From: Lepidodermella squamata
Lineage: Eukaryota > Animalia > Gastrotricha
DNA: 64,000 nt
NCBI GenBank assembly: GCA_047495785.1
Contig: JBLDXI010000017.1
Location: forward strand, 620,001 to 684,000
Direction: 5' to 3'
This document shows, in pieces, positions 43,325 to 62,537 of the stretch. Under the pieces are notes generated by a model that was not told the origin of the DNA, searched no databases, and saw only the letters and a program-made list of their open reading frames with translations. How positions within the stretch are numbered: the stretch's first letter is position 1; each line of letters opens with the position of its first letter. Both the position numbers and the translations under genes were made by a program.

Positions 43325-45367
43325 ATGAGAAATTTAAAAGATTTCCTGCAATGGTTCCGCATCAAATCTGACGACAGTAGTGAGGACACTGAAGCTGGTA
43401 ATGTGACTACTAGGACCAATTCAACGTCCCCGCCTGGTCGAAATCACCAAGTCCATCCGTTGAAGCAGACGCCGTCTGGTCAAATGAACGGCGGGGTCAC
43501 AGATGGCGATGGCTGGTCTGACCTAAAAAAGCAGACTGTTTTTATTATACCCGACGACGCACTGTCCGACCGCGAAGGGTCAACGACGCCGTCGAAGCGG
43601 CGAGCCTTACGACAGGCGGATAGCTTAGTGGCTGATGTCAAGCACAGCGCTGATTTGCAAAAGGCGAAGATGAAACCGGTTGATACTGATTCGATTGCAG
43701 CGTCGCTGACGAAGGAGGACAGCGAGTGCCTTGGCTGCTTTGTGCCAGCTTTCACGGCGGCTCTGAAACGGCTGCATCAACATGACAACGATAATGATGA
43801 TGAAAATATCGTTGTCGAGCCCGGGGTCGATGAAAGCGATACAGGTATTTACGATAATTTGAAAAAATTCACTTCAGAAAATAATTTCTTTTGCCTTGGG
43901 TTAACTTTGAGCATATCCCATCGTCAAAGGTTTGAAATCGGCCTAAATTCTGAAATTTTATACAATTTGGTCAGATTGATTGAAATTTGATTGGTTTGCG
44001 AATTTAGGCAATTTTAGGAAGTTCCTGATTTTCGGAAAATCAAAACAATTTTTTCATAAATTGAACACTTGGCGTGTTAATATTTTCATAGAAACTTCCC
44101 TTGTCAAGTTCATACAAGAATGAGTTTTCATGTGATAGATATGAAGGGGTTCTAATTCCCAATGCAATTTCGGGGTTCGAAATCCGAAAGTGCATTTCTA
44201 TTGTTAAAAGAGCTATCCATTTTATTAAATCAAAAATTGGTTGTCCTTCAAGTTACTTCAACATTAACGCCAAACCCATTCGAAAAAGTTGGCAAGAACA
44301 AACTCTATGAAACAAGCTTTTCAATTTTACCGTTCTTTTGTCTTATAGTTCTTGTTTTTTTACGCATTTAATTTTCTTTCATGATCATGCAGGACATTAC
44401 TATGTACCCAGAAGAGTCTGGCGATCCCCAGAAAAAGAAGCCTGTAGGCAATCCGCGTCGTTGTCACTTGCCGTTGTGTTCTTGTCTTGTTGCATGAAAA
44501 GTTCAGATCATTTGCTAATCTCTAAATTTTGTAGTTCCAATAGTCTTATGATTCTAATGTTGTGACTTTTGCCTCGGGGAGTCTGATTAAATTCAATAAA
44601 TGTATTCTCAATGTCTGTTTTGTCACGTTGCACTACATCATTAGGTGCCTATATTTCAAGTTCAATCTTTTCCTGTTTTATTCAGCTTTCCGTCAGATGT
44701 TCGAAGCTTTAGACCGGGATGGCAGTGGTAGCATTGACATATTTGTAAGTCCAATATTTTCAATTATAATCGAATCAATCTCATTCACATTTATCCGTAA
44801 CAGGAATTGAAGAAAATGGTCGAAGGCCTTGGTCTGCCTTGCAAGAAGAGCGACCTTAAACGCATGTTTGCCCGCATCGATCGAGACAGTAAGTTCACTG
44901 AATTTCATTACAAATAAGGTCAGGAGTCCATAATTTCACCCTCAAGTGGATGGCAACATTTCATTTGAAGATTTTAAGGAGGATTTGATCAGCCGATGGA
45001 CTGCCCCTGAAGAACGGAGACACTTGCTTGTTCAGCTATTCAAGGTACATCAACAATGATGGCAATTGATTTTTCTTTAATTTCCATCTATTTTCAGATG
45101 TTCGACGTGACCGGTGACAACCAAATGCAGCCGAAAGAGGTGAAAGTCGTTATGATGAGTATCGGCGAGAAGGTTAGTAACCAGGAGATTGACGAAATGT
45201 TCAAGCAGTTTAGCCAAGACTCGGATAAAACAACCATTACCCTGGAAGAATTTGTAACAGCCATGGAAAAGCACATTGACTCGATTCTACCAAAACCGGA
45301 GACTGAAATTCCGACAAAAGTTATCAGCTATCCTAAAGGAAGCCCTTCAACCCAGTTAGTCGCTTGA
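43325..45367 (+). CDS. Calmodulin/troponin C-like EF-hand protein with long low-complexity N-terminal extension; about 5 exons
   Basis: EF loops FEALDRDGSGSIDIF..., FARIDRD(M)DGNISFEDF, FDVTGDNQMQPKEV and FSQDSDKTTITLEEF. Confidence 0.82.
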
Positions 45368-45450: not shown

Positions 45451-46647
45451 TTATTGCGCTGCTAGTTTTTTCCGCTGAAAATTACGGTAATACGTGTTAA
45501 TTCTAGATTCAACTTCTCGTCGAGACATATCTTTCTTCTTATCAGAGTCAAATAAGTTGTGAATCAATTGTTCACTTTCTGGTAAAACATGGGTAACATA
45601 CGCTCCAGTCGGATGCAGTCTATAAATGAAGTATTCCAGGGATAGCATGTAACCAGGAGACCCAGATACGTCGAAAGCTATCGCTGATTCAGAGCAGCAG
45701 GTCTCCCAATCCGTAGCCAGCGGATATTTAGCAACCATCCGCTGGGCTGAATCTTCCGGGAACAAACCAGTCTCCATGAAATCCCAGAGATTAGCCAGTA
45801 AGATAAATCTCGCCCTGCCTCGGTTGTCTCGAGTCTCACCAGGTTTGATTCCGGCTTTTTTGAAACAAGTTTCGGTCAGCAAATGCTCGTTCATAGCTAT
45901 AAAGGCACTTTTGTTGTATAAGCAACTTGGGTCGGTCCGTATTGCGTTCTCCACGACGTGAGCCAAGGCTCCCCTCGAAAAGACATAGGCACCATTTGCA
46001 ACGAAATCATCGACTAATTCCTGACCGAATAAGTGAGGCTCGCTTGTGTTGAATTGGGCTAGAAAAATCCTCAAATTCTCCATCACTACATAACTTACAT
46101 CTGTTGTTCGGAGGAACCAGTCGAAATCATCTTTAAAGTTGTCGTAGATCCATGGCAGTAAGGGCGCGTTTTGCAACGAGTAGGAAAGTATGATGTTATT
46201 CGAGTTGGCATCGAAGCCTAGACTGTATTCGGGGCCGGCATCAGTGGATTCGTAGACATTCAGCCATAAATTGCATCGTTTGGACCAGGTCGAGCTGATT
46301 TCGGCGTTGCAAATGATTCCAGGGAACACGGAATTGCATATGCAAAGGACTCGAATTTTGTCGTGTAGGACTTCGTTGATTTTTGATAGATCTATCCTAG
46401 TCTTATTCGCTTGTGACAAGATTAATGGAAGAATTGCCTTTTTAGGGCGTTGACTCGTATTTCGACTGAAGAAGATCACGATCGACAGCAGGCCGATGAA
46501 TAATGAGATTTTTGAACAAATAGTTAATTTAGCAAAACTGCGATAACCGTAGACGATAGGCTTCATTCTTTCCTTGATATCAAAAGAGGTGCCATCCACT
46601 GGGTTTGTCGTGAAAGCACGAATCGTATCAAGAAGAAACTGGGGCAT
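45451..46647 (-). CDS. GT31 C1GALT1-family pseudoenzyme (Cosmc/C1GALT1C1-like), unpaired copy, intronless
   Basis: Type II anchor, TWSKRCN, VMENLR, CCSESAI and EYFIYRL are retained. DDD is replaced (WFLRTTDVSY), ED becomes EH, and HY becomes DV. Confidence 0.8.
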   Translation of the reverse strand: MPQFLLDTIRAFTTNPVDGTSFDIKERMKPIVYGYRSFAKLTICSKISLFIGLLSIVIFFSRNTSQRPKKAILPLILSQANKTRIDLSKINEVLHDKIRVLCICNSVFPGIICNAEISSTWSKRCNLWLNVYESTDAGPEYSLGFDANSNNIILSYSLQNAPLLPWIYDNFKDDFDWFLRTTDVSYVVMENLRIFLAQFNTSEPHLFGQELVDDFVANGAYVFSRGALAHVVENAIRTDPSCLYNKSAFIAMNEHLLTETCFKKAGIKPGETRDNRGRARFILLANLWDFMETGLFPEDSAQRMVAKYPLATDWETCCSESAIAFDVSGSPGYMLSLEYFIYRLHPTGAYVTHVLPESEQLIHNLFDSDKKKDMSRREVESRINTYYRNFQRKKLAAQ

Positions 46648-47392
46648 AACTGAGTGTTTGTAAATGCGTGCGAGAAAACTTTCGTGGTCACTTTAATGTC
46701 ATTCAGACTTTTGTTCGTGTAAAAGGTGTATGCACATGTTTAAGGCACGTTTTACACGCTCACTTGTAAGTAATGTTAGTGATTCCTTATCATAACGAGA
46801 CCTGTGTCAAGTGGAGGCCGCCATACCCGCATGGTCAGCTTTTTAATTCATGTTACAGCTGAACAGATGATTGTTAACTCAAATTATCTAGACTAAAAGC
46901 TATGCAGAGAACATAATTTAGCTGAATGATGATGGCTTTTCGAATGCACTTCGTTACCCACCCCGGAAATAACGTGCTCAAAGATCCTGAGATCAGTTTT
47001 CAATCATCATTTCTTGACGGCTTGTAACGTCGATCAGCTCTAAATGTATACATTTAGCCAGCAGTACGTCTGCGTGTTTTCTAAGTAGGTTCATGATTTT
47101 GGGACCCTTCACTCAAACCTGAGGGACTCCGCTATTTGTTGTGGAAAATTTAAAAGTTACATCCTAAAGTGCAAAATAATATGCAGTGCCTCAGCAAGCC
47201 GCAAGCTTCCTTCCTTATAATGGATTAGCCGAGACAAATATTTCTTTCAGTGGGCGTGCTGTCAATGAGAGCAAGTTTGATCATTTTAAGTCTGAGGATA
47301 GCATTTCAAGATTATCCTGGAAAGTTTTGCTTAGCGCCTATCGCCTATCATTCGCCCTTCGTCCTATCGTTCTAAGTTTGAAAAATATACCT

Positions 47393-49717
47393 ATGTTGCA
47401 ATTTTCTTTTTGGAAAATAAACATGTTGTTATTTCAACTCATCGAGACCTTGCTGTCGCATTGCGTTGTTCTTGGAAGGAAGCCTTACACGATGAAGGTG
47501 TTTGAAATGCTTCCGTTGAGTGGTCAGGCGCCAAGAAACGGCCGTGACTGTCTATTCGGCTCTGAAGTCGCGATATCTGAAGTGAACAAGCGGTCTGATA
47601 TTCTCTCAGATTATCACCTAGAGCTTGTCGCAGGCGATGAGTATTCGGAAGGCTATAAAGCAGTAAGTGGTACTATGGAATTTTACCGTAATTTCGAGGG
47701 AAAACTCCGCGACAATGCGACTGAATTCATGTCCCCAGCTATGATTGCGGGATATCAAACTACTGGATGCCGCGGTATAGGCGGAATGTTGCATCATATC
47801 GGAATGGTTGCTTTCTCCATCTCGGCAGCTGGCACTGTCCTTACAGACAGATCTCGTTATCCGAATATTTATCTCACCCGAGCTCATTCTGTTAATTTGG
47901 TCCATGCCCACGTTCAAATCATGCGGAATATCGGGAAGTGGCGGAAAGCAGCGATTTTGGTCTACTTCCCAAACGCGGCCGATTTCACATCTGCTCAGCT
48001 TCTTCAGCAGGTCGCACAATATCATGATATCAAGATCGCAGCTTTTGATGGCATTATAGACTTCATGGATCCTACACCACTAATCAATATAAAAACAAGA
48101 GATATCCGCGTCATATTTGTTTGGACGTCTCTTCTGGTGCTGGGCAGACAATTTTTCTGCGAAACTTACAAATTGGGAATGACTTGTGATAGATACGTCT
48201 TTCTCTCACCGCTGAACCTTCTAACCGATCCTTACACTATTCCTGAAGTAGTTTACCCAGGCTGTACCAGGGAAATTATCATGCAGCAATTGAAATGCAC
48301 CTATGCTGCCGGGCCTCAACAAATCCCTGTTTCATACAGGGTCAAATCTTACCTTGGATATGACGCCAATGAATTCGAAGCGAAATTCGACAACATCTCA
48401 AGCCGGTCTCGCGATGTCGACTACCCGTTTCGATATCAATGCCACGACGCTGCTTTAGATGTTATCGTCACTTTGGAAGAGGCTGAGAAGGCTATGAAAA
48501 AAGATTCAAATGGCACATTGACCTTGAGAAATTTCACGGAAAAGCCTCAACTTGTCATGAAATACGTCAATCAGTCCGCGATTAAGCTGGATTACTTCGG
48601 TCTGAGGATTGGTCGAATAAAATACAGCGATGTTTCAGGGGAGCTGGCGACAGATTTCTCCAGTATTGTATATTGGGGAACGGGAAATTTATTGAACCTA
48701 GGGATGATCTTACAAAAGGACAACACATCTGGAAGGAGCAACGATGACTATGCCCCAGACCTGTCGATGGATTTCCCATGGCTCACTGCAAATGGAAAGC
48801 CGCCGAAAGATACTATTGAACACTTGTACGTCACAGATGCAGTGCAACCAGAAGTATTCGTAGCTATTACGGCTCTAAACATTATTTGGACTTTGCTCTC
48901 GTCCTGGGGACTCGCTAGAAACCTGAGACAACCCCACTCGCGAGATAAATTGATCAAATTGCTCGCGTTCGGCGGATGTCTATTTTTGAATCTATCATCA
49001 TTTTTATTCGCGATCAACCTAACATCGGTCGATTCTGTTGCAATTTGGAACCTGCGAATCTCGTGTCTTGCCCTTGGTCTATCAGTAATCAATGGAATCA
49101 TTTTCGGTCGGATGTATTCTTTCAAGATCGATCTGGATGAAAGTTTATTTCGGGTGGCTAGCAGCAAGGTTAGCATATATCTGGCCAGAAGCTCATCTCG
49201 AAATTCTTCACGATCTTCTGCCGCGGCAACTCCCAATGTTCGACTGCCCATAGCGTTGAATCGCAAGAGCATTTATTACGTAGCTGCAGCTGTTAGCATA
49301 GCATGTGCTGTAGTCATTCTGTGGCTGGCATTCGACCCTTTAGTTTGCACAACAGTCAGTAAGTCTTATTTCTACGATTTTATCGTCGACGCTTACTTGG
49401 AGAGAATGGCTTTGTATTGCTTCTCGAAATTCCAAGCTGCTTGGCAGTTCTCTCTCGCCGGTTTTCACGCAATTCTCCTCGTTTTCTCTGCATACTATGC
49501 GTATTACTTGCGAAGCAAATCTGCGAACCGTTACATTCCTGAATTTTAATACCCTACACTCCTTGCGTTATTTACTGGAATAGGACTGATACCAGCAGCC
49601 ATTCTCATCCTTTTAACTCTCAGGGACCCTGTTGCCCAAGACCTTGTCATTGCCGTTGTTTCATTTTTATATTCAGTAGTTACAGGGTTTTCAATGTATT
49701 GTTACTCGAAAGCATGA
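47393..49717 (+). pseudogene. Intronless class C (GABA-B-like) GPCR with one in-frame TAA at 49547-49549 between TM5 and TM6
   Basis: Venus-flytrap motifs (AISEVNKRSDILSDYHLEL, LTDRSRYPNIY, WRKAAIL, PPKD) and TM1-5 (WLAFDPL). The same frame after the TAA gives two more hydrophobic helices ending ...YSKA*. Confidence 0.75.
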
Positions 49718-49773
49718 ATATTTGACTGCAATTTGGGAAATACAAAATGTGGAAGCTCAAGAGACTTCAGCAA

Positions 49774-50851
49774 TCAGCTCTTAGTCCTTATCACCTCTGA
49801 GTTTCCAACTCCAAACGGTCTCATTCGATTGATAAGGTAATCAGCAGATAGCTGTGAGTGGAAAGAAGAATTGTTGTCAAAATAAAAGATGTGTTAAGGT
49901 GGATCATACCATATGACCCCCGGGTGCCATGTAATGCATAGATATAGCTTCGCTCGAACAGCATTCTCTGCCTTCGATATAAGTCTCTTCATACTGCCAG
50001 ATCCAACTATCTTTCGTGGATGTTCCCTTCGCTAGGTGGTACCATGCTGGAAAAATCAGAAACCTATGGCGACCGTCTTTATCCCTAGCATCGATTGTAT
50101 TCTCCCCGATGTTATGAAGGCAGTATCCGATTAGAGCATCTTCGTTCCCACCTCTAAACGGACTAGGACATATAGCCTTGTTGGGAAAGGCCTCTTTCAC
50201 AAGCCTCGACATAGTACGGCGTGAAAAGATTTGAGCTGATCCGCTGACGTAGTTCCGATGATAAGTCGAGTTTCGCTTGCTGAAAGGCCTACCGAAGTAA
50301 TGGTCCTTATCGGCATGGAAATGTTTGACGAAATCTCGGAGATTCTCCATAACTAAATAAGTATCATCATCAGCCTTTACGAACCAGTCGTATTCATTGA
50401 TATATCGCTCGTAGACCGATTGCCACGCCGCGAATATTTTAAAGCTCACAAATTCGCGGCCAGTTTGATTGTAGAAAGCTTCGGAGGGCAGACTGCTGTC
50501 CTTCACGTCCGATGCGAACAAGATTTTATCGCACTTCTTGCCCCATGTTTCTCTAACCCAAATTGCCCTTTCATTGTGCCTTGGAGCTGTTGTTGAGCAC
50601 AAGCAGAATACTTTGATCTTGTCTGGCAGGGATTCAGTTGAGCTTTGAGTAGCAATAACTGAACTTATCGCATTTTCCCTACAGCTTGCGCCAAATTTGA
50701 GTTGCCAAACGTGGAGAAACAGTAAGATCGATACGGCAATTTTTGCGAAGTTGTAGGTTTGCCAAATAAGTGCGTAGTAATTTGTTTGTAAAAAGTGACG
50801 TAGTACATTGGAGTAACGACGTTTTGCGTAGTAGAATGGTTTATTCGCCAT
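49774..50851 (-). CDS. C1GALT1: Core-1 beta-1,3-galactosyltransferase (T-synthase)-like, intact motifs: join(49910..50851,49774..49851)
   Basis: TWGKKCD, WFVKADDDTYLVMENLR, YFGR, NED and CCS.EAISMHY. A 58-bp intron after GHM leads to LSADYLINRMRPFG. Confidence 0.85.
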
Positions 50852-50946
50852 TGAATGCAGCGTGATAGGCCATTCATGAATATTCAATGTTTCGCATAAA
50901 TTAAACCTAAAATTGCAAAATGCAGCTCTGTACAACAATTTCTAGT

Positions 50947-52110
50947 TCATTTCGAAAACGATAGAAAATAAAAGATTTTGAAAAATATTGACTCTTCATG
51001 GTTTGGTTGGAATAGTTTTCTCAAGGTTGCTCGAGCCCTGTATCTTTCTGCAGCATCTTCAAGGTCTTCAAGATCGAGCTTTGTAGTTACGCCCTTTTCT
51101 TCCTTCAGCAGATTTTGATATAGAAATCGATTTTCCGGTAGAAAATGAATTACTTTCACGCCAACGGGCCTGAGTCGATACAGCATATATTCGTAGCTTT
51201 GCAAGAATCCGAAGTTTCCAGAACAATCAAAGGCAATCGCACTTTCTGAACAGCAGCTGTGAATGCCGGGTCGAATCGGGTATTTGCTGTCCGAATTCGG
51301 TAGTTCGCTCATTTTTTTCGGTACCGCCATGTCCCATAAGTTCAATAGCACAGGAAATCTAGACCTGCCTAATTGATCTCGGCTATCGTTCGGGAAAATG
51401 CTCGCCATTTTGAAGCACTCCAGGTCAATCACGTAATCATTGAGGTTTTTCGGTGATAACGTTTTCACGGCGAGGTCTTCACAAGTTTCAGTCATGGGTT
51501 TGAAGGCCCTTTCGACTAATTGAGCGAGAGCGCCTGAGGAGAAAACATAAGCCCGTCCAGAGACGAAACCATTTTTCAATTCGTGACCGAAAAGTTGCCG
51601 CTCAGAGGCGTTGTATTGTCCCACGAAAAGTCGAAGATTTTCCATGACAATGTAAGACGTATCTTGAACCCGTAGGATCCAATCGAAATGGCCGGCTAGG
51701 TTGTGGTGGATCCAAGGATAGACTGAGCTTCCAACTGCATAAGATAACCTTAAATCGCCTGTCGCGGGATTCACCGTTAGGTTGTAGTAAGACTTTGACT
51801 GATAGATATTCAGCCATATATTGCATCGTTTGCCCCAAGTTTTGCGGGTTCGATAGTTGCAGAGCTCAGTCTTTGGTTCGGAGCTACAGACACATAACAC
51901 TCGTATATTATCAAACATCACAGAAGAAATCTTCTGCAGGTCCATGTTTTGGGACTCGGCAATCTCGGGGGGACTGTTGTGAGTCTCATTCGGGACGAGA
52001 AAGACGCAAAGAGAGGCGAGACATATCAAAATGGAAACTATGGATGAAGCGTTCAAAGTTCAAGACACATTTAGAATTGAGACAGAGCAGTCTACGTTTT
52101 TAGCGCCCAT
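50947..52110 (-). pseudogene. Cosmc-like GT31 pseudoenzyme with in-frame TGA at 52060-52062, just before the signal anchor
   Basis: ATG 52110 reads MGAKNVDCSVSILNVS*TLNASSIVSILICLAS... The body has WILRVQDTSYIVMENLR and CCSESAIAFDC. Confidence 0.6.
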
Positions 52111-52525
52111 GCGACAAAATCCAATTCTGTGACAGCTTGTGTAGCGGAAATAGATTTATTGTAGCTAGGTCGTTTTTCTGTTCAGTCGATATTTTGCCTA
52201 GCATTTCGTATTCAACGCGACATGGTAGAATCACATGACGGTTGCAATGGCGCGCAACGGACTAGAAATAATTTATTGCTTGGGCGGTATTGCTAGCTAA
52301 GTTTTTTCGATCAGTGCAGGAAGGACAATAGTCCCTCAAACACGTGACACCATTCGCATTTCTGCTGCGACATATCTGCAAAGAATCGATGGTTGCAAAA
52401 GGTAAACAGTGAAGAGAATATTTGGACAAAACGCTAGGTCATTTTTCATGTCAAAAGTGGCAAAAACTCCCGTTAACACATGATTTTATTCACAGATAGA
52501 AAGCCCTTCTTATTGTTTTATAAAT

Positions 52526-53708
52526 TCAATTGCACAGTCTGACCACCTTTGAGTTACTCGCTCCAAAGGGACGCATTCGGTTGATGAGAAAATCTGCTGC
52601 GAGCTGAAAAAGCGAAAAGGAATGTTCAAGTGAACGATGAAATCAGCTTTCATCATACCATTTTCCCGCCAGGCATGTAGTGCAGTGATATCGCCTTGTT
52701 TGAACAGCAATCCTTCCCCTCGACGTAGTTTTTGTCATATTGCCAAATCCAGTTGTCCGCCGTCGCAGAACCGCGGTATAAATGAATCCAAGCCGAGAAG
52801 ATCAGGAAGCGATTTCGCATCTGCTCATCTCTTGCATCAATCGCGTTGATCCCAATGTTATGCAAGCAGTATCCGATGTAGGCATCTTCGTTCGCGTGAA
52901 TACTCGGGCCAGGGCATACGGCCTTGTTCGGGAAAGCCTCTCTAACCAGCCTGGACAGCGTTCGCCGCGAGAAGATTTGAGCAGATCCGCTGACGTAATG
53001 CTTGTGGAAATCGGATTTCTCATTCTTCAACGGCCGGCCGAAGTAATGGTCCTTATCCGCGTGGAAGTTTTTGACAAAATCGCGTAAATTTTCCATGATG
53101 ATATAAGTATCGTCATCGCCCTTCACGAACCAGTCGTAGTCGTTGATGTATCGATCATGAACAGCTTTCCACGCCGCAAAGATCTTGAAACTGACATATT
53201 CGCGGCCCGTTTGATTGTAGAAAGCTTCGGATGGTAAGAAGTCGTCCCTTTCATCTGATGCGAACAGGATTTTGTCGCACTTTTTACCCCACGTCTCCCG
53301 GACCCAAACAGCTCTTTCCTTATGCTTAGGGCCGGTAGTAGAGCACAAGCAAAAAATTCGCACCGGGTTCGAAGCTGAATTACTGGTGGGTTTCACCGCG
53401 GAAAAAGCTTGTTCGTTCACAGTTAATTCAGGTAATTGAGTTAGCAGCTTTTTCTCTTCGAAGGTAAGCTCCGTTTTCGCAGAAAACTGGTCGAGGCTGT
53501 CGTCTTCATACCGTAATTGCCAGACGTACATGAAGAGTGAAACAGAGAGTAAGATTTTGGTGATTTCAAATGCGAGGTGCAAAATCTTATGCAGATGAGA
53601 GCCCAGCTCTGATGACCATAATAGGGGCAGGGATAGTTGCTTTTTCAGTGGAAGCTTCTCTGTCACGCTTCCGAGCTCGCTATAACCAAAATGCAACCGA
53701 TTCGGCAT
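52526..53708 (-). CDS. C1GALT1: T-synthase-like, intact motifs; one intron near the 3' end
   Basis: WFVKGDDDTYIIMENLR, ANED and ISLHY. After GKM|GT...TTTTTCAG|, the last exon 52526-52603 reads LAADFLINRMRPFG. Confidence 0.87.
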
Positions 53709-53798
53709 CTCTCTCGCTTGTCGCCTCGAAATATATCATAAATTATTGATAAAATCTAAAAAAGGAAGACAAATTTAAAAATTAGTTTATTTGCAAAA

Positions 53799-55109
53799 TT
53801 ATCCTGGCTTTTGGTCTTCGAAAGCAAATTGGAGAGGCTCGAATGTGCTTTTCCACGTTGTCGATGCGGTCGGCCAGGTTCTTCGTGAATCGATGATTTT
53901 GTTCAATCTAGCCTCGAATCCGCCTTGAGCTTGGATTGCTTTGATAGTTTCGTTCTGGTACAATTTGGCCCGCTTTTCCAGGCTTGAGAGATTTATTTTA
54001 GGAATTTTTCGGTCCCTAGTCAGATTGTCGAGCAAAATGTCACTTTGAGGTAAGATATGGATGAAATCGACACCAACTGGTCGCAACCTGTATAGCAGAT
54101 ACTCGTATGACTGCAGAAAACCGGGATGGCCCGATGCATCGAACGCGACAGCACTTTCAGAACAACAATGATCGATTCCAACTTGAAACAAATGTTTACT
54201 GCTGGACCAGCTGGGCGAGGGAAGTTCATCTAAATCACCAGGTTTCGCTATAAGCCATAAATTGAACAAGATCGCGAATCGTTCCTTCTTCAAATGATCG
54301 CGACTATCTTCCGGTGAAATGCCAGCCATTTTGAAGCATAAAGCGTTCATTTGATGCTCTTTCACCATTAGTTCTCCTATTCTGCCATATGTGATAAGAG
54401 CTTCATCAACACATGAGGTCCCATCTGAACTATTTGCTCGAAAAGCTGTTTCGACAACTTGTTTTAAAGCGCCATGGGAGAAGGTGTAAGCTTGACTAGC
54501 AACAAAGCCATCTTTTAGCTCAAAGCCGAAAAGATGAGCCTCTGATGAATTATACTGGCCAAGGAAAATTCTTAGATTCTCCATCACAGCATAGGTCGTG
54601 TCTTTAATCCGCAAAATCCAGTCAAACTGGTCGAGTAAATGATCGTAAATCCAAGGATAGACTGGAGTTTCGAGTACGTAGGTTAGGCTCATATCGCCTG
54701 TTGTGTGGTTAATTTTCAAGTTGTAAGGCGGTTTGTTGTTTGAGATGTAAACCTCCAACCAGTGATTGCATCGCTTTCCCCACAATTTTCTCGCCCGAAA
54801 TGTGCATGGTTCGATAGGTTCTCTCCCGCTACTGCAGACGCATAAAATTCGTATATGGTCAAACATTAAGGAGGATATATTTTCGAGATCGATTTTCGGC
54901 GCGAGATCTTGCTCCTGGATTACGTCGATAAGGGCGACATCGATGATATTTGAATTCCGCGAAGATCGATGATTAGGCATAAGGTACACCGATAATGATA
55001 TGATACACATGACAAGAGACACGCCGGAGCAAAAGCTGATTTTCGACAGTGTTGCCATAAGCCAGTGGCATATTCCTCGAGAGAAACCGGCTATAATGCC
55101 GGATCTCAT
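53799..55109 (-). CDS. Cosmc-like GT31 pseudoenzyme, intronless
   Basis: WILRIKDTTYAVMENLR (no DDD), KEH in place of ED, CCSESAVAFDA; type II anchor. Confidence 0.82.
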   Translation of the reverse strand: MRSGIIAGFSRGICHWLMATLSKISFCSGVSLVMCIISLSVYLMPNHRSSRNSNIIDVALIDVIQEQDLAPKIDLENISSLMFDHIRILCVCSSGREPIEPCTFRARKLWGKRCNHWLEVYISNNKPPYNLKINHTTGDMSLTYVLETPVYPWIYDHLLDQFDWILRIKDTTYAVMENLRIFLGQYNSSEAHLFGFELKDGFVASQAYTFSHGALKQVVETAFRANSSDGTSCVDEALITYGRIGELMVKEHQMNALCFKMAGISPEDSRDHLKKERFAILFNLWLIAKPGDLDELPSPSWSSSKHLFQVGIDHCCSESAVAFDASGHPGFLQSYEYLLYRLRPVGVDFIHILPQSDILLDNLTRDRKIPKINLSSLEKRAKLYQNETIKAIQAQGGFEARLNKIIDSRRTWPTASTTWKSTFEPLQFAFEDQKPG

Positions 55110-57007
55110 AACTGAAGAGTGCGTGGAGTCAAATAAATCCTATGAAAAACTGGAAATGAACTTGGAGAATATCTAGGTCACCCATTTATTTCTTTTCAAA
55201 TTAAAATAAAAGCTCATGCGCACTAGCAAATATGAAAGACTGCTGTGCACTTTATAACATATCAACATGCAAACACACAAGTAAGTTGCTCTATTGAACT
55301 AACGAGACGAAAATTACTACGGTTCGAAAATCGAGCTGCAGTCTGTATCCAAAAACGAACAAATAATGGCGTGTATAGGATGAGTCTGGACTATATTTTA
55401 AACAAGCATTATTTATGAATGCTACAGCCTATACGAATTCCTGCCCTAGTTTTTTCTTCGTGCGTCTGCAAGCACGTGTTTGCAACAATAATTTATTATA
55501 TAAAGCGATCGTATTAAACTATGTACGCAGGTTTATTTCACTTAACACTCTACTACGCACGCCTTATTAAGTAATATACATCAATTTCGAGAAAAAATCT
55601 GGACGAGTAAATTCGTGGCTTGAATGAAAATCAAAAAGGGGATCCACTTCGAGGGAATTCCAGGTAGACTCAAGGCCTAACAGTTCAGCTGTGCCAAATT
55701 AGGAAATTGAACTGAATGTCTTACTTATGACAAATCTTTAGTATCTAAAAGGATTAATTATTCATCCATAACAGCTAACTACGCATTAGAAACTTTGAGC
55801 TTCTATCATCAAAGACATCCTCATCGATTGGTGGGATCTTCAATAACTATTGACGCAACGGGCATTAGATCGCCTTGGGTAGAAAAACGGGTTATTTTGA
55901 TCTCTAGAAGCAACATTTGAAGAATTTTTCAGGAAGACTGGCATAGGGATTAGGGATTAGTATTCTGCGCTCTGCGCGAAATTTTGTCCACCTTAATTCA
56001 CGCATTATTTGCATCTTAGCGTGGTCGGATTGTAAGACTGAAAGCGTGGCGAGGCTTAACGTCATCTAGCCAAGTGCAACATCACAAACTAGTAGATAGT
56101 GGTTACAGACATGTAACTCGTGGTTTTGCTTTGACACACTGCTTTTTACAATTAAATTCAGCATGTTTTCACGACGCGACGATATCATCCGACGGTATCA
56201 ATATTTTTGCAGTTTTAAGGTTCTAACGGTACACGCTCGGTGGCTCTATAAAGATGGGAAACAAGAACGCGATATCGCGCATCTGAAAGCAAAGAAAATG
56301 AGCCTGCGAGAAAACCCGCTGTGATGACCATCCATAAATTGGAAGCGAGGAGAAAAACAACAAATCGATAGAACTGGCGCATCTCCAGCTGTTCGTTTGA
56401 TGCATCCTATAAAATGTAATTACCATTTCGACATTCGACTGAATTTGGCAAAAGTTAGATCAAGTCAGGTCGATATCTCCCCGAAAGAACTGCGCACAAG
56501 TGACCGACATTCGGGTGCTGGATGCGAAAAAACGTAGCGGTAAAAAAATGATGAGCTGTGGCAACTGCATTGCTAATTAACGCAAATCGATTCTCCTATC
56601 GCTATTTGGCTAAGAAATTGTTTGCACACAAGTTTTAGACTTCTTGGCGTTATCTATTGTCCGGCATATTAAACGAATGAGTCTAATATTTTTGATGTTT
56701 GACGCCATACATCAAAATTCAGAACGGGATTGCAGAGAAGCGAAGTCGAATGAAGTCTTGAATTGTTTATGATCTACATACCCATCATTATTGATCGACG
56801 CAACACTTTAGGTAAATCGAAGTTTTATTCTTCAATAGCTCTTTTTACCGTGGAAAATAGCATAAAGACGAAAGTCATCAATGTATGTAGCGACATTGAG
56901 TTATATAGTGATGGCAATTTGTTCATACAGCTCAGTAAGTATTTGATCAAACAAAGGAAAGCGCGAAAAATGATGTCACCACTTCGAGATATATAAATCA
57001 GCTGATA

Positions 57008-58184
57008 TCATGAGTCAACAGATCGACCATCACTTTTCAGAGGGCATGGTGGCACAACACGAGAATTTCCGACACCGAATGGCCGCAATTGATAAATTAG
57101 ATAATTCATAGCCAGCTAAATGAGAAAAATTTGTGATTTTTTATAAAATAATTTGAACTGGACTAACCATCTTTCCAGCAGACATGTAATGCAGTGAAAC
57201 CGCCTCATTTGAGCAGCATTCTTCGCCTTCGACATACGTTTTATCGTATCGCCAAATCCAATTTGTAGCCGAGGCGGTTCCTTTGTGTAGATGAGTCCAG
57301 GAAGAAAATACCAAGAATCTATTGCGCTTGAGTTCGTCCCGCGAATCCCGCGCTTCAATGCCGATGTTGTACAAACAGTAGCCTATGTAAGCATCTTCGT
57401 TTGCCTTCAATTTGGGCCCAGGACACTTTGTTTTGTCCGGATACGCTTCTTTAATTAGCCGGCTTAAGGTTTGCCGCGAAAACACCTGCGCAGATCCGCT
57501 GACGTAGTGCATATGGTACTTTGAGTTTACATTTCTCAGCGGTCTGCCGAAGTAATAGTCTTCCTCAGGATTCAGGTCTTTGAGGAAGTGACGAAGATTC
57601 TCAACAATTAGGAAGGTATCGTCGTCAGCTTTCACAAACCAATCATAGTCGTCTAGATAGTTGTCGTGAATTGACTGCCAAGCTGCGAACATTTTAAAGC
57701 TGACAAACTGCCGGCCAGTTTCGTTGTAGAAAGCTTCAGCGGGTAAATAGTCGTCTTGCAAGTCCGAGGCGAATAGTAACTTGTCGCACTTTCGGCCCCA
57801 GGTTTCCCGAACCCATATTGCACGTTCCTTATGCCTGGGACCTGTCGTTGAGCAGACGCAAAATATTTTCGGCCCAGGATTTTCCGGTGGTCTTGTATCC
57901 AACGAGCCCGTTGAAAATACTGAATCCGATGACTCGGTCACAGATTCCCCTAGGTCAGTTTGAATCGTCAGTTTCGCAACAGAGGCAACTTGTCGCCGAG
58001 TATTTTGATGCCGCAATTGCCACAGGGTTAGGAAGAACAGAATAGCGGACAAAAGTTTCACCAATTCGTAAGCACCATACAGCAAGGGATGTAGCCTGCC
58101 AAAGAAGTGTGACCGTTTCAGTTGAACAATTCGTTTCTTGATCGAGCGTTGGTCGCTCGTCGACTGCATTATCGAATTAGGCAT
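57008..58184 (-). CDS. C1GALT1: T-synthase-like, intact motifs; one intron near the 3' end
   Basis: WFVKADDDTFLIVENLR, ANED and VSLHY. Last exon 57008-57115 reads LAMNYLIYQLRPFG. Confidence 0.87.
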
Positions 58185-58420
58185 GGCTCAAAGTTAGAGC
58201 CAGGCTCTTTAACGATAACTGCCTTATTCAGCAATATTTCGTCATTTAACAATGATAGTTCTAAAAAAGTAAAGATAAGCATGGATAAATTCTTTCATTG
58301 TTGAGGAAGCTTCATTAAAAAGCGCCAATAATTCAAAAAAAATCCTTCTTAGTTTATGCCACTTGAGAATTCGCACTTTTGTTTAAGAAAGACGCAACAT
58401 ATCAGTTAATTTTGACATGC

Positions 58421-59572
58421 TCAGCTGATTTCAGACGATTGACTCATAGAATGTTGTTCAAAAGCGGCAAAAGTATCTATTTTAGGTGAGCCGTTGAAGA
58501 GATTCTTTTTAAGAGTCTCACTCGCCGGTAAAACGTGGTTAACAGTGACTCCAACAGGATGAAGTCGATAGAGGATGTATTCGAATGCTAGTGCAAATCC
58601 GTGGTGGCCACCAACGTCGAACGCGATAGCAGATTCTGAGCAGCATTGATCCATGCCGTCTTGAAGAGGCCGTTTACTTTTAGCCCAAACGTGCGTCTTG
58701 TTAGCAACTGCGCCTCGAATAGTTACATCCCACAAGTTAAAGAGTAAGACGAATCGATTCTTGCCTAAATTATCTCGGCTATCCTTTGGCCGGATGCCAG
58801 CTGTTTTGAAGCAATTACCGATAACGTCATGCTCGTTTTCGAAATGGTCAACGATTTTTGGCTCAAGGCAACCGACAAATGGTGGATGAGCGCTGAATCC
58901 ATACCTTACCAGCTTCTTCAGTGCGCCTTTCGAGAAAACGTAAGCTGTATGAAGAACGAAATCATCTTTCAGCTCGTATCCGAATAGCAACGAATCAGAT
59001 GCGTTGTGTTGGGCGAGGAAAATTCGCAGATTTTCCATGACGACGTAGCCATTTTCAGTCACCCTGAGCAGCCAATCGAAATCGTCCCGCATATTGTCGT
59101 AGACCCATTTGTAAACAGGCTTTGTTAACGAGTATGACAGTGTTATGTCGCCGGTTTTCTCGTTGATCGTTGCATTATATTCGTGGTCATCTTCGAAGCT
59201 TTCGTAGGCATTCATCCATCGATTACATCTCTTACCCCATGTTTCTCTAGGGTGTTCGTTGCATAATCTATCGGAATATCCGGCATGGCAGATGCATAGT
59301 ATCCGGATTTTTTCATGCATTAAGGAGGCGATGTTTGATAGGTCCTTTTTACTATCCTGCCGGGGTACGATTCGCTTCTCGCTATTCGCTGGAACCAAAT
59401 CGATAAGGGCTAGGGCGAAATTCGGGCGGTCGTCATAATCGGAGCCGAAATCAGGCGCGAAATAGGTGAGAATTCCTAGTAAGCAAATTGCCAAAGATAG
59501 CTTTGAGCAAGCCGATAATCGGTGGATTCCGCTCAAGGCGTGGCGGGAAATGCTGACAAACTTGTCGGCCAT
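58421..59572 (-). CDS. Cosmc-like GT31 pseudoenzyme, intronless
   Basis: WLLRVTENGYVVMENLR (no DDD), NEHD, CCSESAIAFDV; type II anchor. Confidence 0.82.
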   Translation of the reverse strand: MADKFVSISRHALSGIHRLSACSKLSLAICLLGILTYFAPDFGSDYDDRPNFALALIDLVPANSEKRIVPRQDSKKDLSNIASLMHEKIRILCICHAGYSDRLCNEHPRETWGKRCNRWMNAYESFEDDHEYNATINEKTGDITLSYSLTKPVYKWVYDNMRDDFDWLLRVTENGYVVMENLRIFLAQHNASDSLLFGYELKDDFVLHTAYVFSKGALKKLVRYGFSAHPPFVGCLEPKIVDHFENEHDVIGNCFKTAGIRPKDSRDNLGKNRFVLLFNLWDVTIRGAVANKTHVWAKSKRPLQDGMDQCCSESAIAFDVGGHHGFALAFEYILYRLHPVGVTVNHVLPASETLKKNLFNGSPKIDTFAAFEQHSMSQSSEIS

Positions 59573-62537
59573 TTTCTAAGTACTGTGGCCCAGAGACTTG
59601 CAGCTGAATGCAAACATATTTTAAGGCTAAAAACAAACATGAAAGAATTACAATTTTGTATGCAGCGTGGCCTCAAGGCCTTTTCATCACATATACACTA
59701 CGCACTACACACATGTCGTAGGCTACCGTCCGCATCGCCTAAGCTCACTTACGGAGTGTTTACCAGCCAAATCCGTGCTTGGACAAAAAAGTGTACGTAA
59801 ATGGGTTAGTTTTTTTGGACTTTTAAACCACGTGATGTGAAAGTTTGCTCACACCTTTTCAGTGGGCACAAGGTAAATATTTTTGCGTGACATTAAAGAG
59901 TGGTACAATGACAAAGTTCAAGTCGGACAAAATCTGCCTACTTCTACACCGATTTTAGGCAAAAGAAGAGAGATCCAATCCTTGAGACCACCACAATGTA
60001 ATGCAATGGAATCGGTTTTTTACAATTAGCTAATCACGTGCTTGGAGAAGGGTGTGACGCATTTTGCGAATGAATAAAAATCAATAGCCTAGTACCAGCC
60101 AGTTTTTTCCTCATGCGTGAATGATAAATGATGTGGTAGCCTACTGAAGAATCGGGAATCAATTTTTATTGCATTGTAACCAATCAGATATATTGATTCG
60201 GCGCATAGATAATAATTAAGTACAGTAAAGGTGAAGATTGTAGGACCAAGGGGTGGAAAATGTGACAATTCATTACAGGAAACTCCAGATCGGAAAAATT
60301 GCGATGGGATCGGATGAAAAAAATTAATTACAGCAAGTTGTTGTGTAAATAGCTTCCGAGCGGCGCAGAGCCTAAAATAATATCGGCGCGATGGTGCTTC
60401 AGAAAATGTGATTATCTCGCGTATCATTATTGCGGTCACTTGCGTGTTGGATGTGAGGCGGTCGGTCGGTCACTGCATGCGACGCACATAAATATTTCAG
60501 GCAAAAACAAACGAATTAATTCGGCACAAGGAAATATCGCTTATTTTTTATGCACTGTTATTAGCGTATAGGCGTCGATTCGGCCACTCTCCAGGCCATA
60601 CACATCTAGTGAATGAATATCGTATATTGATATATCGTGGAGATTACTTACTACTATCATGCTTTGGCACTACAGGGGCTCAGTTTTCGCAATAAATTCA
60701 TCGAAAAAATTAATCACATCCTGTGCGCGCATCACGGGAAAAATCCATATAATATTCTCGCCAATCAGGCAAAGTGTGCGTAGTAGTAGGAGTTGTAGTC
60801 AATACGAGATTGATTAAGAAACAAGCGCTTTTGGCTCACCAGGTGCGGACGCGAGAAATTGCCATTATCGTTTCATGGACGCTAGTGTTAACAAGCCAAT
60901 AGTTGCTGATTAAGTAAACACGGATGCACGCTTTCTTAAGGTAGCTTTATTCGCAATAATTGAAACATTATCCGCTATAATTCATGTTGAGTAGGATTTA
61001 TTGTGATGCCCGAAAAATCCCGAATGCTTTTCGCACCTTGCACGGTGCAATCATTCGAGCGTAAATAACAAATCAAGGGTAATTATGGGTGAAATGAAAA
61101 CATTTCAATTTTCATATAGCGGTTTAGTGCATGTTGTTCAATTTTTCTCGTCCCAGAAGAAATTAACGCCCCGCCCCACCTGTGCGCGATTGAGGACGTA
61201 TTTAGCAGCAATTGATTTCCGCAATAATTGAGCAATATCCTAGGCCGCAGAAAGCAAACATATAAGCGAAAAAAACAAGTTGTGCGAAATGCATTGCCAG
61301 GACGCATTGCTTGCGTTGAAGAGTGTGACACGCTGCATGTCTCATCGCCTGCTACCACGATTTAGAAAACGCGTCTTTTGTCAGCTCTTGAAAAGTTAAA
61401 CGCGCGCTCGCTATAAAAGCGATGATCCATCCATATACGGCGTATAACAAGAGGTTGTATATTCTGCTGATGATGATAATTCACCAACGCGCGTAACCAA
61501 CGCACAATACCTGTGTGTGTGTTAAAAATTTTGAAGAAGATGCGCGCGCATTTTCAAGAATTTTTACAAGCGCAAATTACTTGCGTAAACATACGCGCAT
61601 ATACATATATAGTAGACAGAGAGACACAGAGCAGTAGCGCTTCTGCTGCGCTTTAAATGAGCAGCTAGCCGGCGATAAACCCGTGCTTATACGCACTCGA
61701 TTATTTTCATGTACGTTGCAAGCAAGCAGAGGACAAGCAACGACGAGACACGTTAATCCTAACAAATTACCCTCTGTATGATAATCAAAATTTGCGACTG
61801 TGATAACATCGCGGCAACACTCTGTCTGGCATGCTAATGCCAAGCAATATTTCGGTATTTTGGTGCAATGCTTTTTTGTTTTTTTTCCTGCAGCAACGAG
61901 GCTTGTTCGCGGATGAAATATTGTCCATTTTTTTCTGCAATATCCTGTTGGCGTGCATTCACCAATAACTCAGATTGGTTTTGTTTACAGACAAACAGAA
62001 AAAAGTTGGCAAATAAACTCTCCAGCGCGGTGCATCTTCAAACCTTTCAACATGAAACAGCAAAAAATGCCCATCTCAAAGGATTGCTAGAAAACTAGAG
62101 CAAATTCAGGCATTTCACTCTGAAGTTTCCCTAGAAACTTTGTGATTCGCGTTTGATATGTGTGTAGCATTGTTCTGCGACTTTGGGATTCGGTTGCTCT
62201 AGAATACAAGTACAAATGATGGGAAGAAAGAATCCAGGTTCACGATAAAAAAGAAAAATTAGCCTCGGCGATTAGAAAAAGTGCCAGATTAATCGGTGAA
62301 ATGAATTCGATCTTCTAGCCGAGCGCAAAAAAATTCCTCCGTCGTGCAATGACGTGCCTACTAGCTGATATTTTGTATTTAATCTATCGTGGCTACATCT
62401 TAAAAAAAAAACAGGCAGAATACTGACTTGAGAATCCGAAGCCATCATAAAATGACTTCCCGTTCAGAACTTTTTTGTCGATAAATTCTCCTATACACTA
62501 AAGAGCCGACAGCCAGCTACCTCTCAATTAGTTTTCC

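What the first reader, a model, noticed from the sequence alone, without database searches (positions are those of the whole stretch)
45451..59572. Triplicated two-gene cassette: dead Cosmc-like GT31 paralogue directly upstream of an active T-synthase
Seen in sequence: the seven C1GALT1-family genes fall into two strictly alternating classes. Class E (49774-50851, 52526-53708, 57008-58184) keeps the metal-binding DDD, the ED and the C-terminal HY, and all three have one intron at the same position. Class P (45451-46647, 50947-52110, 53799-55109, 58421-59572) is intronless and keeps the fold landmarks (WxKRCN, VMENLR, CCS, YRL), but has lost all three catalytic motifs in every copy while three of four stay full-length open frames. 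Each E gene lies only 95, 90 or 236 bp downstream of a P gene on the same strand, while cassettes are separated by 0.4-1.9 kb. Established knowledge: vertebrate T-synthase needs the inactive paralogue Cosmc (C1GALT1C1, single coding exon, no DxD, unlinked to C1GALT1), whereas C. elegans and Drosophila T-synthases work without it. Inference: this invertebrate has a physically linked chaperone/enzyme or heterodimer module that duplicates as a unit, possibly giving each T-synthase paralogue its own partner. It could be a true Cosmc orthologue preserving ancestral linkage, or a convergent invention.
Basis: partly seen in the sequence, partly recalled or inferred. Interest (0 to 1): 0.9.

Follow-up and report, generated by a model that had tools for sequence, protein, structure and literature searches.

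The report
Paired dead and active glycosyltransferase genes
An invertebrate genome holds three gene pairs (plus one unpaired dead copy) in which a catalytically dead copy of the core-1 O-glycan enzyme sits just upstream of an intact copy; a second species keeps the pairing and a nematode evolved it separately, so the dead copy may be a helper of the live one, as Cosmc is in vertebrates, but this is not shown.

Summary

- **E genes:** all three keep the DxD, the catalytic Asp, the C-terminal His-Tyr and the GalNAc-binding residues. They share one intron, which RNA contigs show spliced out in E2.
- **P genes:** they keep the fold, three disulfides and the membrane anchor. Every copy has lost 10 of 16 functional residues.
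- **Selection and expression:** P is not decaying. Synonymous sites are saturated while pN is 0.33-0.43. P3 is transcribed and polyadenylated 66 nt before the E2 start codon. Only P2 has an early stop.

**New here**
- A metagenome contig from another species has the same P-then-E pair and no other shared synteny.
- P and E trees agree by cassette.
- Caenorhabditis angaria has independently evolved dead-then-active pairs, also under constraint.

**Verdict:** P most likely acts as a non-catalytic partner of E, analogous to Cosmc. This is inferred, not shown. Cosmc orthology is not supported, though no Cosmc sequence could be fetched for a direct tree.

First-reader notes s1-410336 and s1-395197 report similar pairs elsewhere in this genome (unchecked).

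The parts
58421..59572 (-). P4: intronless, DxD-less GT31 paralogue, 383 aa, type II membrane anchor
   Evidence: ORF; 7q4i match E = 7e-24; lost catalytic and ligand residues
58185..58420 (-). P4-to-E3 spacer, 236 bp, with a pyrimidine-rich TTTTAG acceptor-like site ending at 58261
   Evidence: Sequence read
57008..58184 (-). E3: catalytically intact C1GALT1-type gene. Exons 57168-58184 and 57008-57115; intron 57116-57167
   Evidence: Pfam Fringe
53799..55109 (-). P3: dead paralogue, 436 aa, transcribed
   Evidence: RNA contigs cover 53774-55053; AlphaFold2 model pLDDT 83 with best fold match 7q4i
53709..53798 (-). P3-to-E2 spacer, 90 bp. AATAAA at 53791-53786, poly(A) addition at 53774, acceptor-like CCTTTTTTAG ending at 53756, then the E2 ATG at 53708
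   Evidence: Non-templated run of 19 T joined at 53774 in one X1 contig (table 7); sequence
52526..53708 (-). E2: intact C1GALT1-type gene. Exons 52659-53708 and 52526-52603; intron 52604-52658
   Evidence: Spliced joint 52603/52659 in RNA contigs. 31 of 35 listed coding differences in other samples are synonymous; the 4 non-synonymous ones affect 2 codons
50947..52110 (-). P2: dead paralogue with an in-frame TGA at 52062-52060 (codon 17) before the membrane anchor. The remaining 369 codons are open
   Evidence: RNA contig coverage is sparse. Listed differences are 3 non-synonymous to 3 synonymous
50852..50946 (-). P2-to-E1 spacer, 95 bp, with the acceptor-like site GCAATTTTAG ending at 50907
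49774..50851 (-). E1: intact C1GALT1-type gene. Exons 49910-50851 and 49774-49851; intron 49852-49909
45451..46647 (-). P1: orphan dead paralogue, 398 aa, with no E gene downstream
   Evidence: tblastn finds no further GT31 locus below 45451

Best explanation
Each cassette encodes two type II membrane proteins of the C1GALT1 branch of family GT31.

E has every residue needed to bind UDP-Gal and Mn2+ and a GalNAc-peptide, and to catalyse transfer. It is therefore most likely a core-1-type beta1,3-galactosyltransferase.

P has the same GT-A fold, the three disulfides, the membrane anchor and the alpha-9 dimer helix. It cannot bind metal, nucleotide or acceptor, and it lacks the catalytic base.

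P and E are produced together. The P3 mRNA ends 66 nt before the E2 start codon, and a lone splice acceptor lies in between. This is the layout of an operon resolved by spliced-leader trans-splicing.

My inference is that P is the non-catalytic partner of E. Either it is a subunit that takes one seat of the normally homodimeric enzyme, or it is a private folding helper. In that sense it is a functional analogue of vertebrate Cosmc or of CHPF. It arose independently by duplication of a C1GALT1-type gene in this lineage, and the pair then multiplied as a unit.

Shown: anatomy, residue loss, constraint, transcription, separate polyadenylated mRNAs, conserved adjacency, congruent trees.
Inferred: co-transcription, physical partnership, and its direction (help rather than inhibit).
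For: - Residue table: E keeps 14 of 16 functional positions. All five P-type proteins, including the one from the other species, lost the same 10. Six Cys are invariant (residues).
- Fold: the AlphaFold2 model of P3 has pLDDT 83. Foldseek's best match is DmC1GalT1 (7q4i). The next matches are the CHSY3-CHPF heterodimer chains.
- Constraint: pS is 0.75-0.93 (saturated) in all pairs, while pN is 0.33-0.43 for P and 0.24-0.35 for E.
- Expression: X1 contigs cover P3 and E2, show the spliced E2 intron and a poly(A) tail at 53774, and leave the intergenic bins empty.
- Conserved pair: metagenome contig L001 has a P homologue (39% identity) 200 bp upstream of an E homologue (48%), with the same signal-then-acceptor spacer and no other synteny.
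- Co-duplication: the P tree is (L001_P,(P4,(P1,(P3,P2)))). The E tree is (L001_E,(E3,(E2,E1))). The sister pairs have support 100/99 and 98/95.
- Independent parallel: C. angaria has two loci with a dead gene 52-61 bp upstream of an active one. The dead copies group with their own neighbour (92/83). Union with P is rejected (AU p = 0.023). Their dN/dS is 0.31.
- Precedent: C1GalT1 is an obligate homodimer, and Cosmc may act on dimer formation.
Against: - No interaction or dependence was tested.
- P and E are paralogues born by tandem duplication, so adjacency and alternation can arise from history and unequal crossing-over alone.
- Topological congruence of three cassettes has a chance of 1 in 3.
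- Tight spacing and lone acceptors are genome-wide here, so they are not specific to this pair.
- Orphan P1 has no E partner.
- E1 sits behind P2, which carries an early stop, so a strict one-to-one need is doubtful.
- Invertebrate T-synthases tested so far fold without any helper.
- The poly(A) end rests on a single contig.
Confidence: 0.5

Rival explanations
1. Linkage by history only. P is a neofunctionalised paralogue, for example a binding or structural protein of the secretory pathway, whose job does not involve E. The pair stays adjacent because it was born in tandem and is locked in one transcription unit.
For: - Tandem origin explains adjacency.
- Operon-like packing is general in this genome.
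- Orphan P1 stays intact without an E partner.
- Three pocket positions are conserved within P: D182, His at 255 and Asp/Asn at 324. This hints at a new site rather than an empty shell.
- P has 4-7 N-glycan sequons against 1-2 in E.
Against: - The pair is the only microsynteny kept between two species whose synonymous sites are saturated.
- The same dead-then-active layout evolved again in C. angaria and is under constraint.
- The acceptor-binding residues are lost too, so a lectin-like role on GalNAc is unlikely.
Confidence: 0.22
2. P is a negative regulator. As a dead subunit it would form inactive or mislocalised heterodimers with E, as the glycosyltransferase-like GnT1IP/MGAT4D inhibits MGAT1.
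For: - Dead glycosyltransferase paralogues that inhibit an active enzyme are known (PMC2935569 and PMC4572887).
- C1GalT1 is an obligate dimer, so a dead partner could poison it.
Against: - Producing an inhibitor together with its target at a fixed ratio from one unit is an odd design.
- In the same GT31 subgroup the known dead partners, Cosmc and CHPF, promote activity.
Confidence: 0.1
3. P is the true orthologue of vertebrate Cosmc (C1GALT1C1), and the adjacency is the ancestral state.
For: - Petit et al. 2020 place the C1GALT/C1GALT1C1 split before Cnidaria and report homologues in Hydra and Branchiostoma.
- P is intronless, lacks the DxD and has a membrane anchor, like Cosmc.
- The language-model search puts Cosmc clusters at ranks 1-2 for P4, but at ranks 4 and 11 for E2.
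- The very long P stem leaves its deep position open.
Against: - No vertebrate Cosmc was recognised among the best 150 hits of the P profile, while many active enzymes score higher.
- The same language-model preference is given to the C. angaria dead copy, which is a local nematode duplicate. It therefore reflects convergent loss, not descent.
- True P-type proteins were found in only one other organism among 1.84 billion representatives.
Confidence: 0.08
4. P still has its own catalytic activity, metal-independent or rewired.
For: - Positions 182, 255 (His) and 324 (Asp) are conserved within P.
- Some GT-A enzymes work without a DxD (my own knowledge).
Against: - Donor-contacting R152 and K158 and the metal ligands are lost.
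- The catalytic base and all acceptor contacts are lost.
- Most of these positions vary freely among P copies.
- No Pfam glycosyltransferase model matches.
Confidence: 0.05
5. P genes are decaying pseudogenes.
For: P2 has an early stop, and its listed differences are 3 non-synonymous to 3 synonymous.
Against: - Four of five P-type genes are open over 334-436 codons despite saturated synonymous divergence.
- About 100 columns are invariant among the four window copies.
- P3 is transcribed and polyadenylated.
Confidence: 0.03

Closest known systems
Cosmc (C1GALT1C1), private chaperone of vertebrate T-synthase
   Same: It is a paralogue of C1GALT1 and a type II membrane protein. It has no DxD and a single coding exon, and it keeps the Cys-Cys motif. 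Cosmc has a disulfide in its transmembrane region. Four of five P-type proteins have a conserved Cys at the anchor boundary.
   Different: Cosmc is unlinked to its client (X chromosome), whereas P lies 90-236 bp upstream of E. In Cosmc the DxD is reported as deleted, whereas in P it is substituted. P has also lost the catalytic Asp, the C-terminal His-Tyr and the acceptor contacts. Orthology is not supported, and P function is untested.
CHPF with CHSY (chondroitin synthase heterodimers, same FRb subgroup of GT31)
   Same: An inactive paralogue forms a stable complex with the active enzyme. These heterodimer structures (9o4g, 9q8z) are the next-best fold matches of the P3 model after C1GalT1.
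   Different: CHPF and CHSY are two-domain proteins and their genes are not adjacent. A P-E complex is only inferred.
Drosophila C1GalT1 (PDB 7q4i)
   Same: It is the closest solved structure for both classes (E2 at 2e-45, P4 at 7e-24). E keeps its catalytic and GalNAc-binding residues.
   Different: It is a homodimer that needs no helper. P lacks its whole active site.
Dead-then-active C1GALT1 pairs of Caenorhabditis angaria (found here; loci L008 and L009)
   Same: A DxD-less gene lies 52-61 bp upstream of an active T-synthase-type gene on the same strand. The unit is duplicated, and the dead copies have dN/dS of 0.31.
   Different: It has an independent, younger origin. The dead copy is 35-40% identical to its own neighbour and groups with it. 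I found no paper on it.
GnT1IP / MGAT4D
   Same: It is a glycosyltransferase-like protein without activity that acts on one specific enzyme.
   Different: It inhibits rather than helps, belongs to a different family, and is not linked to its target.

Membership tests
GT31, C1GALT1 branch (class P) | GT-A fold homologous to C1GalT1, with its three disulfides | tested here: met
   7q4i at E = 7e-24, and 4e-31 with the profile. AlphaFold2 model plus Foldseek gives a target-normalised TM-score of 0.71. Six Cys are invariant
GT31, C1GALT1 branch (class P) | DxD metal-binding motif | tested here: not met
   The motif reads TDV, QDT, KDT and TEN in the window, and NDA in L001
GT31, C1GALT1 branch (class P) | Catalytic base (Asp255 of the xED motif) and metal-binding C-terminal His324 | tested here: not met
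   Asp255 is H, Y, H, H, H. His324 is D, D, D, D, N
T-synthase (core 1 beta1,3-galactosyltransferase), class E | DxD, xED catalytic Asp, C-terminal His-Tyr and UDP contacts | tested here: met
   The pattern R-DDD-ED-HY is present in E1-E3 and L001_E. Only E150T and L155V differ
T-synthase (core 1 beta1,3-galactosyltransferase), class E | GalNAc and peptide contacts Y218, S220, W300, Y304 | tested here: met
   All four residues are kept in all four E-type proteins (residues)
T-synthase (core 1 beta1,3-galactosyltransferase), class E | Orthology to canonical C1GALT1 | tested here: inconclusive
   E forms its own clade on a 0.7-0.9 stem. The other animals' enzymes, including stand-alone P0026 from the L001 organism, group apart at 92/90 and 95/90
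T-synthase (core 1 beta1,3-galactosyltransferase), class E | [quoted passage not shown] | not testable with these tools
   This needs an enzyme assay
Cosmc / C1GALT1C1 (class P) | Descent from the C1GALT1C1 lineage | tested here: inconclusive
   No Cosmc sequence could be fetched. Indirect evidence is negative: no Cosmc was recognised among the best 150 profile hits, and the language-model preference is shared by an independent nematode dead copy
Cosmc / C1GALT1C1 (class P) | Inactive C1GALT1-like type II membrane protein without a DxD | tested here: met
   Helix 26-43 of the P3 model is the anchor
Cosmc / C1GALT1C1 (class P) | ER residence, binding of unfolded T-synthase, and being required for its activity | not testable with these tools
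   This needs localisation, co-expression and refolding assays
Operon resolved by spliced-leader trans-splicing (P-E unit) | The upstream mRNA is polyadenylated just before an unpaired 3' splice site of the downstream gene | tested here: met
   Poly(A) is added at 53774 and the acceptor-like site ends at 53756. Acceptor-like sites are present in all three spacers. By my own estimate about 0.2 would be expected by chance in 421 bp
Operon resolved by spliced-leader trans-splicing (P-E unit) | A leader on the E mRNA and a polycistronic precursor | not tested
   The X1 contig of E2 stops at 53696, inside the coding region. A leader was reported elsewhere in this genome only by note s1-374160

The most novel reading that the evidence does not exclude
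C1GALT1-type enzymes, which work as obligate dimers, repeatedly recruit a dead copy of themselves as a dedicated partner. This would have happened at least three times: Cosmc in vertebrates, P in this lineage, and the dead copies of C. angaria. In compact genomes the two would be fixed in one operon, so that each enzyme paralogue travels and duplicates with its own partner. On this reading the dependence of vertebrate T-synthase on Cosmc would be one case of a general evolutionary tendency, not a vertebrate oddity.
Probability: 0.35. Interest if true: 0.8.

Novelty: new variant of a known kind. Interest (0 to 1): 0.66.

Why it matters
The glycobiology literature states that Cosmc exists only in vertebrates, and that no such helper has been identified in invertebrates. 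One phylogenetic study disagrees. Why T-synthase alone among Golgi enzymes needs a private helper remains an open question.

A dead paralogue that is physically tied to an active one, kept across species and evolved twice independently gives simple, testable material. Express E with and without its own P, and compare with vertebrate Cosmc. A positive result would show that the enzyme-plus-dead-copy arrangement is a recurrent solution. It would also point to dimer formation as the step that needs help.

The finding also gives a clean example of a paralogous enzyme/pseudoenzyme pair inside an animal operon-like unit.

Tried and rejected
- **Fetching a vertebrate Cosmc sequence for a tree.** It is not in the PDB. 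It was not recognised among the 150 listed profile hits. The word-based searches did not reach it. A scan of held proteins for short Cosmc-like words recalled from memory gave no usable query.
- **Language-model similarity to Cosmc.** It looked like support for orthology. I rejected it after two controls. E2 ranks C1GALT1 first. The independent C. angaria dead copy also ranks Cosmc first.
- **Placement of P with C. angaria P0132 in the 113-row quick tree.** This was a long-branch effect. Adding the nematode's own active neighbour moved P0132 to it, and the AU test rejected the union.
- **'P plus E are one clade'.** I rejected this as evidence for a lineage-specific origin. With three monophyletic groups in an unrooted tree it only restates the monophyly of the others.
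- **A lost dimer-interface Tyr in E1 and E2 (the mouse Y321N position).** Counting on the 7q4i chain shows that Tyr336 is the Tyr of the D-Y-L motif. It is kept (F in E2), so I dropped the idea.
- **dN/dS among window paralogues.** It cannot be estimated because synonymous sites are saturated.
- **Upstream regions of a second E-type gene in metagenomes (L006, L007).** They are too short to show whether a P gene is there.
- **Rfam.** No match in the window.
- **N-glycan sequon counts.** E is not unusual for the family.
- **Organism.** It could not be identified.
Full report
**1. What is there**

The region holds exactly seven loci of the C1GALT1 branch of glycosyltransferase family 31. All are on the minus strand (tblastn of all seven proteins against the window). 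Read along the minus strand the order is P4, E3, P3, E2, P2, E1, then an unrelated plus-strand ORF, then P1.

The P-to-E spacers are 236, 90 and 95 bp. The gaps between cassettes are 1898 and 415 bp. A perfect alternation of four P and three E has a chance of 1 in 35.

Each E gene has one phase-0 GT..AG intron of 52-58 nt at the same codon, just before the last helix. P genes have none.

**2. Active and dead**

I took the functional residues from the Drosophila C1GalT1 crystal structure paper (PMC9065035):
- UDP contacts: E150, G151, R152, L155, K158
- Metal ligands: D181 and D183, with D182 on the ribose
- Catalytic base: D255
- Metal and pyrophosphate contacts: H324 and Y325
- GalNAc and peptide contacts: Y218, S220, W300, Y304

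In an HMM-guided alignment, E1-E3 and the E homologue of a second species keep 14 of the 16. The two differences are E150T and L155V.

All four window P proteins and the P homologue of the second species have lost the same ten: R152, K158, D181, D183, Y218 (F), D255 (H or Y), W300, Y304, H324 (D or N) and Y325.

Six cysteines, which form the three disulfides of C1GalT1, are invariant in all nine sequences.

Pfam finds Fringe-like in E and nothing in P. P nevertheless matches the C1GalT1 chain 7q4i at E = 7e-24, and at 4e-31 with a profile. An AlphaFold2 model of P3 has pLDDT 83. Its best fold match is 7q4i, followed by the chains of the CHSY3-CHPF heterodimer.

P is therefore a folded, membrane-anchored pseudo-glycosyltransferase. 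Most lost positions vary freely among P copies. Three are conserved within P: D182, His at 255 and Asp/Asn at 324. This is unexplained.

**3. Not decaying, and expressed**

Synonymous sites are saturated in every paralogue pair (pS 0.75-0.93). Non-synonymous differences are 0.33-0.43 per site for P and 0.24-0.35 for E. The duplications are therefore old. P has been under purifying selection and evolves only about 1.2-1.4 times faster than E.

P2 is the exception. It has an in-frame TGA at codon 17, before the anchor. Its listed differences in other samples are three non-synonymous and three synonymous. E2 has 31 synonymous differences and 4 non-synonymous ones, the latter in two codons.

Run X1 had been labelled RNA only by guess. 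It proves to be RNA for three reasons:
- Its contigs skip exactly the predicted E2 intron (joint 52603/52659, CT..AC on the plus strand).
- They leave the intergenic bins empty.
- One contig carries 19 non-templated T joined at 53774, which is a poly(A) tail on the minus-strand P3 message.

X1 contigs cover P3 and E2 throughout. E1 and P2 are covered only in part.

**4. The spacer**

The P3 stop codon is at 53801-53799, AATAAA at 53791-53786 and the poly(A) site at 53774. A pyrimidine tract ending in TTTTAG follows at 53756. The E2 start codon is at 53708.

The other two spacers also hold one such acceptor-like site each. I estimate about 0.2 by chance in 421 bp. So does the spacer of the second species.

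This is the layout of an operon resolved by spliced-leader trans-splicing. Other notes of this scan report such a leader and the same layout across this genome, and P genes have acceptor-like sites upstream too.

Three points follow:
- The mature P3 and E2 mRNAs are separate.
- Co-transcription is likely but not shown.
- The tight spacing is not in itself special to this pair.

**5. Relatives**

A profile of the four P proteins was scored against 1.84 billion representatives. It gave 2077 hits but only one other true P-type protein, P0001.

P0001 lies on metagenome contig L001, 200 bp upstream of an intronless E-type gene on the same strand. Identity to the window is 39% for P and 48% for E. 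Nothing else on that contig matches the window. The pair is therefore the only microsynteny kept.

The same organism also has a stand-alone canonical-type gene with no P beside it (P0026). It has a second E-type gene whose upstream region is not available.

In a careful tree the P clade (100/100) has the order (L001_P,(P4,(P1,(P3,P2)))). The E clade (100/98) has the order (L001_E,(E3,(E2,E1))). The cassettes P2/E1 and P3/E2 are sisters in both trees (100/99 and 98/95), and P4/E3 lies outside. This is congruent with duplication as a unit, though three cassettes would agree by chance one time in three.

The deep position of P cannot be read from these unrooted trees.

**6. Cosmc or not**

I could not obtain a Cosmc sequence through any tool, so the direct test is missing. 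The indirect evidence is negative.
- No vertebrate Cosmc was recognised among the best 150 profile hits. I checked 30 of them by name and the rest by their active-site pattern. Many active enzymes from arthropods, molluscs and nematodes score higher.
- A protein-language-model search ranks the chordate Cosmc clusters first for P4, and C1GALT1 first for E2.
- The same search also ranks Cosmc first for the dead paralogue of Caenorhabditis angaria, which is a local nematode duplicate (see section 7). This signal therefore reflects convergent loss, not descent.

One paper does place the C1GALT/C1GALT1C1 split before Cnidaria (PMC8022947). Others state that no Cosmc homologue exists in invertebrates.

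**7. An independent parallel**

The C. angaria proteins P0132 and P0163 have EAE in place of DDD, TT in place of ED, and SG in place of HY. Each lies 52-61 bp upstream of a canonical T-synthase-type gene on the same strand. The two loci are about 90 kb apart, and one has a further active copy upstream.

The evidence that this origin is separate:
- The dead copies are 35-40% identical to their own neighbours, against 28% to P4.
- They group with their neighbour (92/83).
- A clade with P is rejected (AU p = 0.023).

The two dead copies differ by dN/dS = 0.31 over 337 codons, so they too are constrained.

Gene models with a degenerate and an active domain in tandem also exist in a mayfly, a limpet and an acorn worm. 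I did not verify these models. About a third of the family's representatives listed have some degenerate motif. Dead copies as such are therefore common. What stands out is long retention next to an active copy.

**8. Reading**

The best-supported mechanism is that P is the non-catalytic partner of E, made together with it. C1GalT1 is an obligate homodimer with a very large interface, and Cosmc has been proposed to act on dimer formation. In the sister branch, CHSY pairs with the inactive CHPF.

A dead copy could take one seat of the dimer or assist folding. P keeps the alpha-1/beta-1 region, the alpha-9 helix with the interface Tyr, and a P-specific conserved C-terminal tail. It also has a conserved Cys at the membrane-anchor boundary, which recalls the transmembrane disulfide of Cosmc.

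None of this is a test. These points count against the reading:
- The tandem origin of the pair is enough to explain adjacency.
- Tight packing is general in this genome.
- P1 is an orphan, and P2 carries a stop in front of an intact E1.
- Invertebrate T-synthases tested so far need no helper.

I put the partner reading at about 0.5. Unrelated function with inherited linkage is at about 0.2, an inhibitory role at 0.1, and true Cosmc orthology below 0.1.

**9. Limits**

- The organism was not identified.
- RNA evidence comes from assembled contigs of one run, and the poly(A) end from a single contig.
- Depth cannot rank the genes.

Noticed in passing
window 47186-49549 (+): A single 787-aa open frame with an ANF_receptor ligand-binding domain (Pfam E = 2.8e-18) and a hydrophobic C-terminal half. 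It looks like a class C GPCR-type receptor. It lies on the opposite strand between E1 and P1 and interrupts the array.
   Followed up: partly
window 52060-52062 (-): P2 has a single in-frame TGA at codon 17, while the remaining 369 codons are open. This could be a very recent null allele, a strain difference or an assembly error. Other samples could not be checked at this site.
   Followed up: partly
L008 10001-12747 and L009 8135-12731 (Caenorhabditis angaria, GCA_947459285.1): Two loci hold a DxD-less C1GALT1 paralogue 52-61 bp upstream of a canonical T-synthase-type gene. The dead copies have dN/dS of 0.31 and arose independently of class P. I found no paper on this.
   Followed up: yes
P0009 (Neocloeon), P0083 (Patella), P0011 (Glandiceps), P0010 (Tubulanus), P0014/P0061 (Rhabditophanes): Public gene models carry two or three tandem C1GALT1-type domains, several with one degenerate and one intact domain. 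They may be real two-domain proteins or fused neighbouring genes.
   Followed up: partly
window class P, alignment positions of Dm D182, D255 and H324: Most active-site positions vary freely in P. Three are conserved across both species: Asp/Glu at 182, His at 255 (Tyr in P2) and Asp/Asn at 324. A rewired site cannot be excluded.
   Followed up: no
L001 2712-3185, 9984-10343, 11224-11622 (+): Three paralogous small ORFs (119-157 aa) each have an N-terminal hydrophobic segment and a shared C-terminal motif ending in IMAGES(I/F). They flank the P-E pair on the metagenome contig. This family is unknown.
   Followed up: no
window 55110-55160, 59573-59630, 46648-46660 (-): Acceptor-like sites (pyrimidine tract plus AG) also lie just upstream of the start codons of P3, P4 and P1. 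This fits genome-wide trans-splicing and is not a feature of the E genes alone.
   Followed up: partly
window 45056-45367 (+) and 35298-36020 (-), 39476-40318 (-): The neighbouring ORFs are an EF-hand pair protein, a sugar-transporter (MFS) exon and an ankyrin-repeat protein. There is no obvious link to glycosylation, except perhaps the transporter.
   Followed up: no
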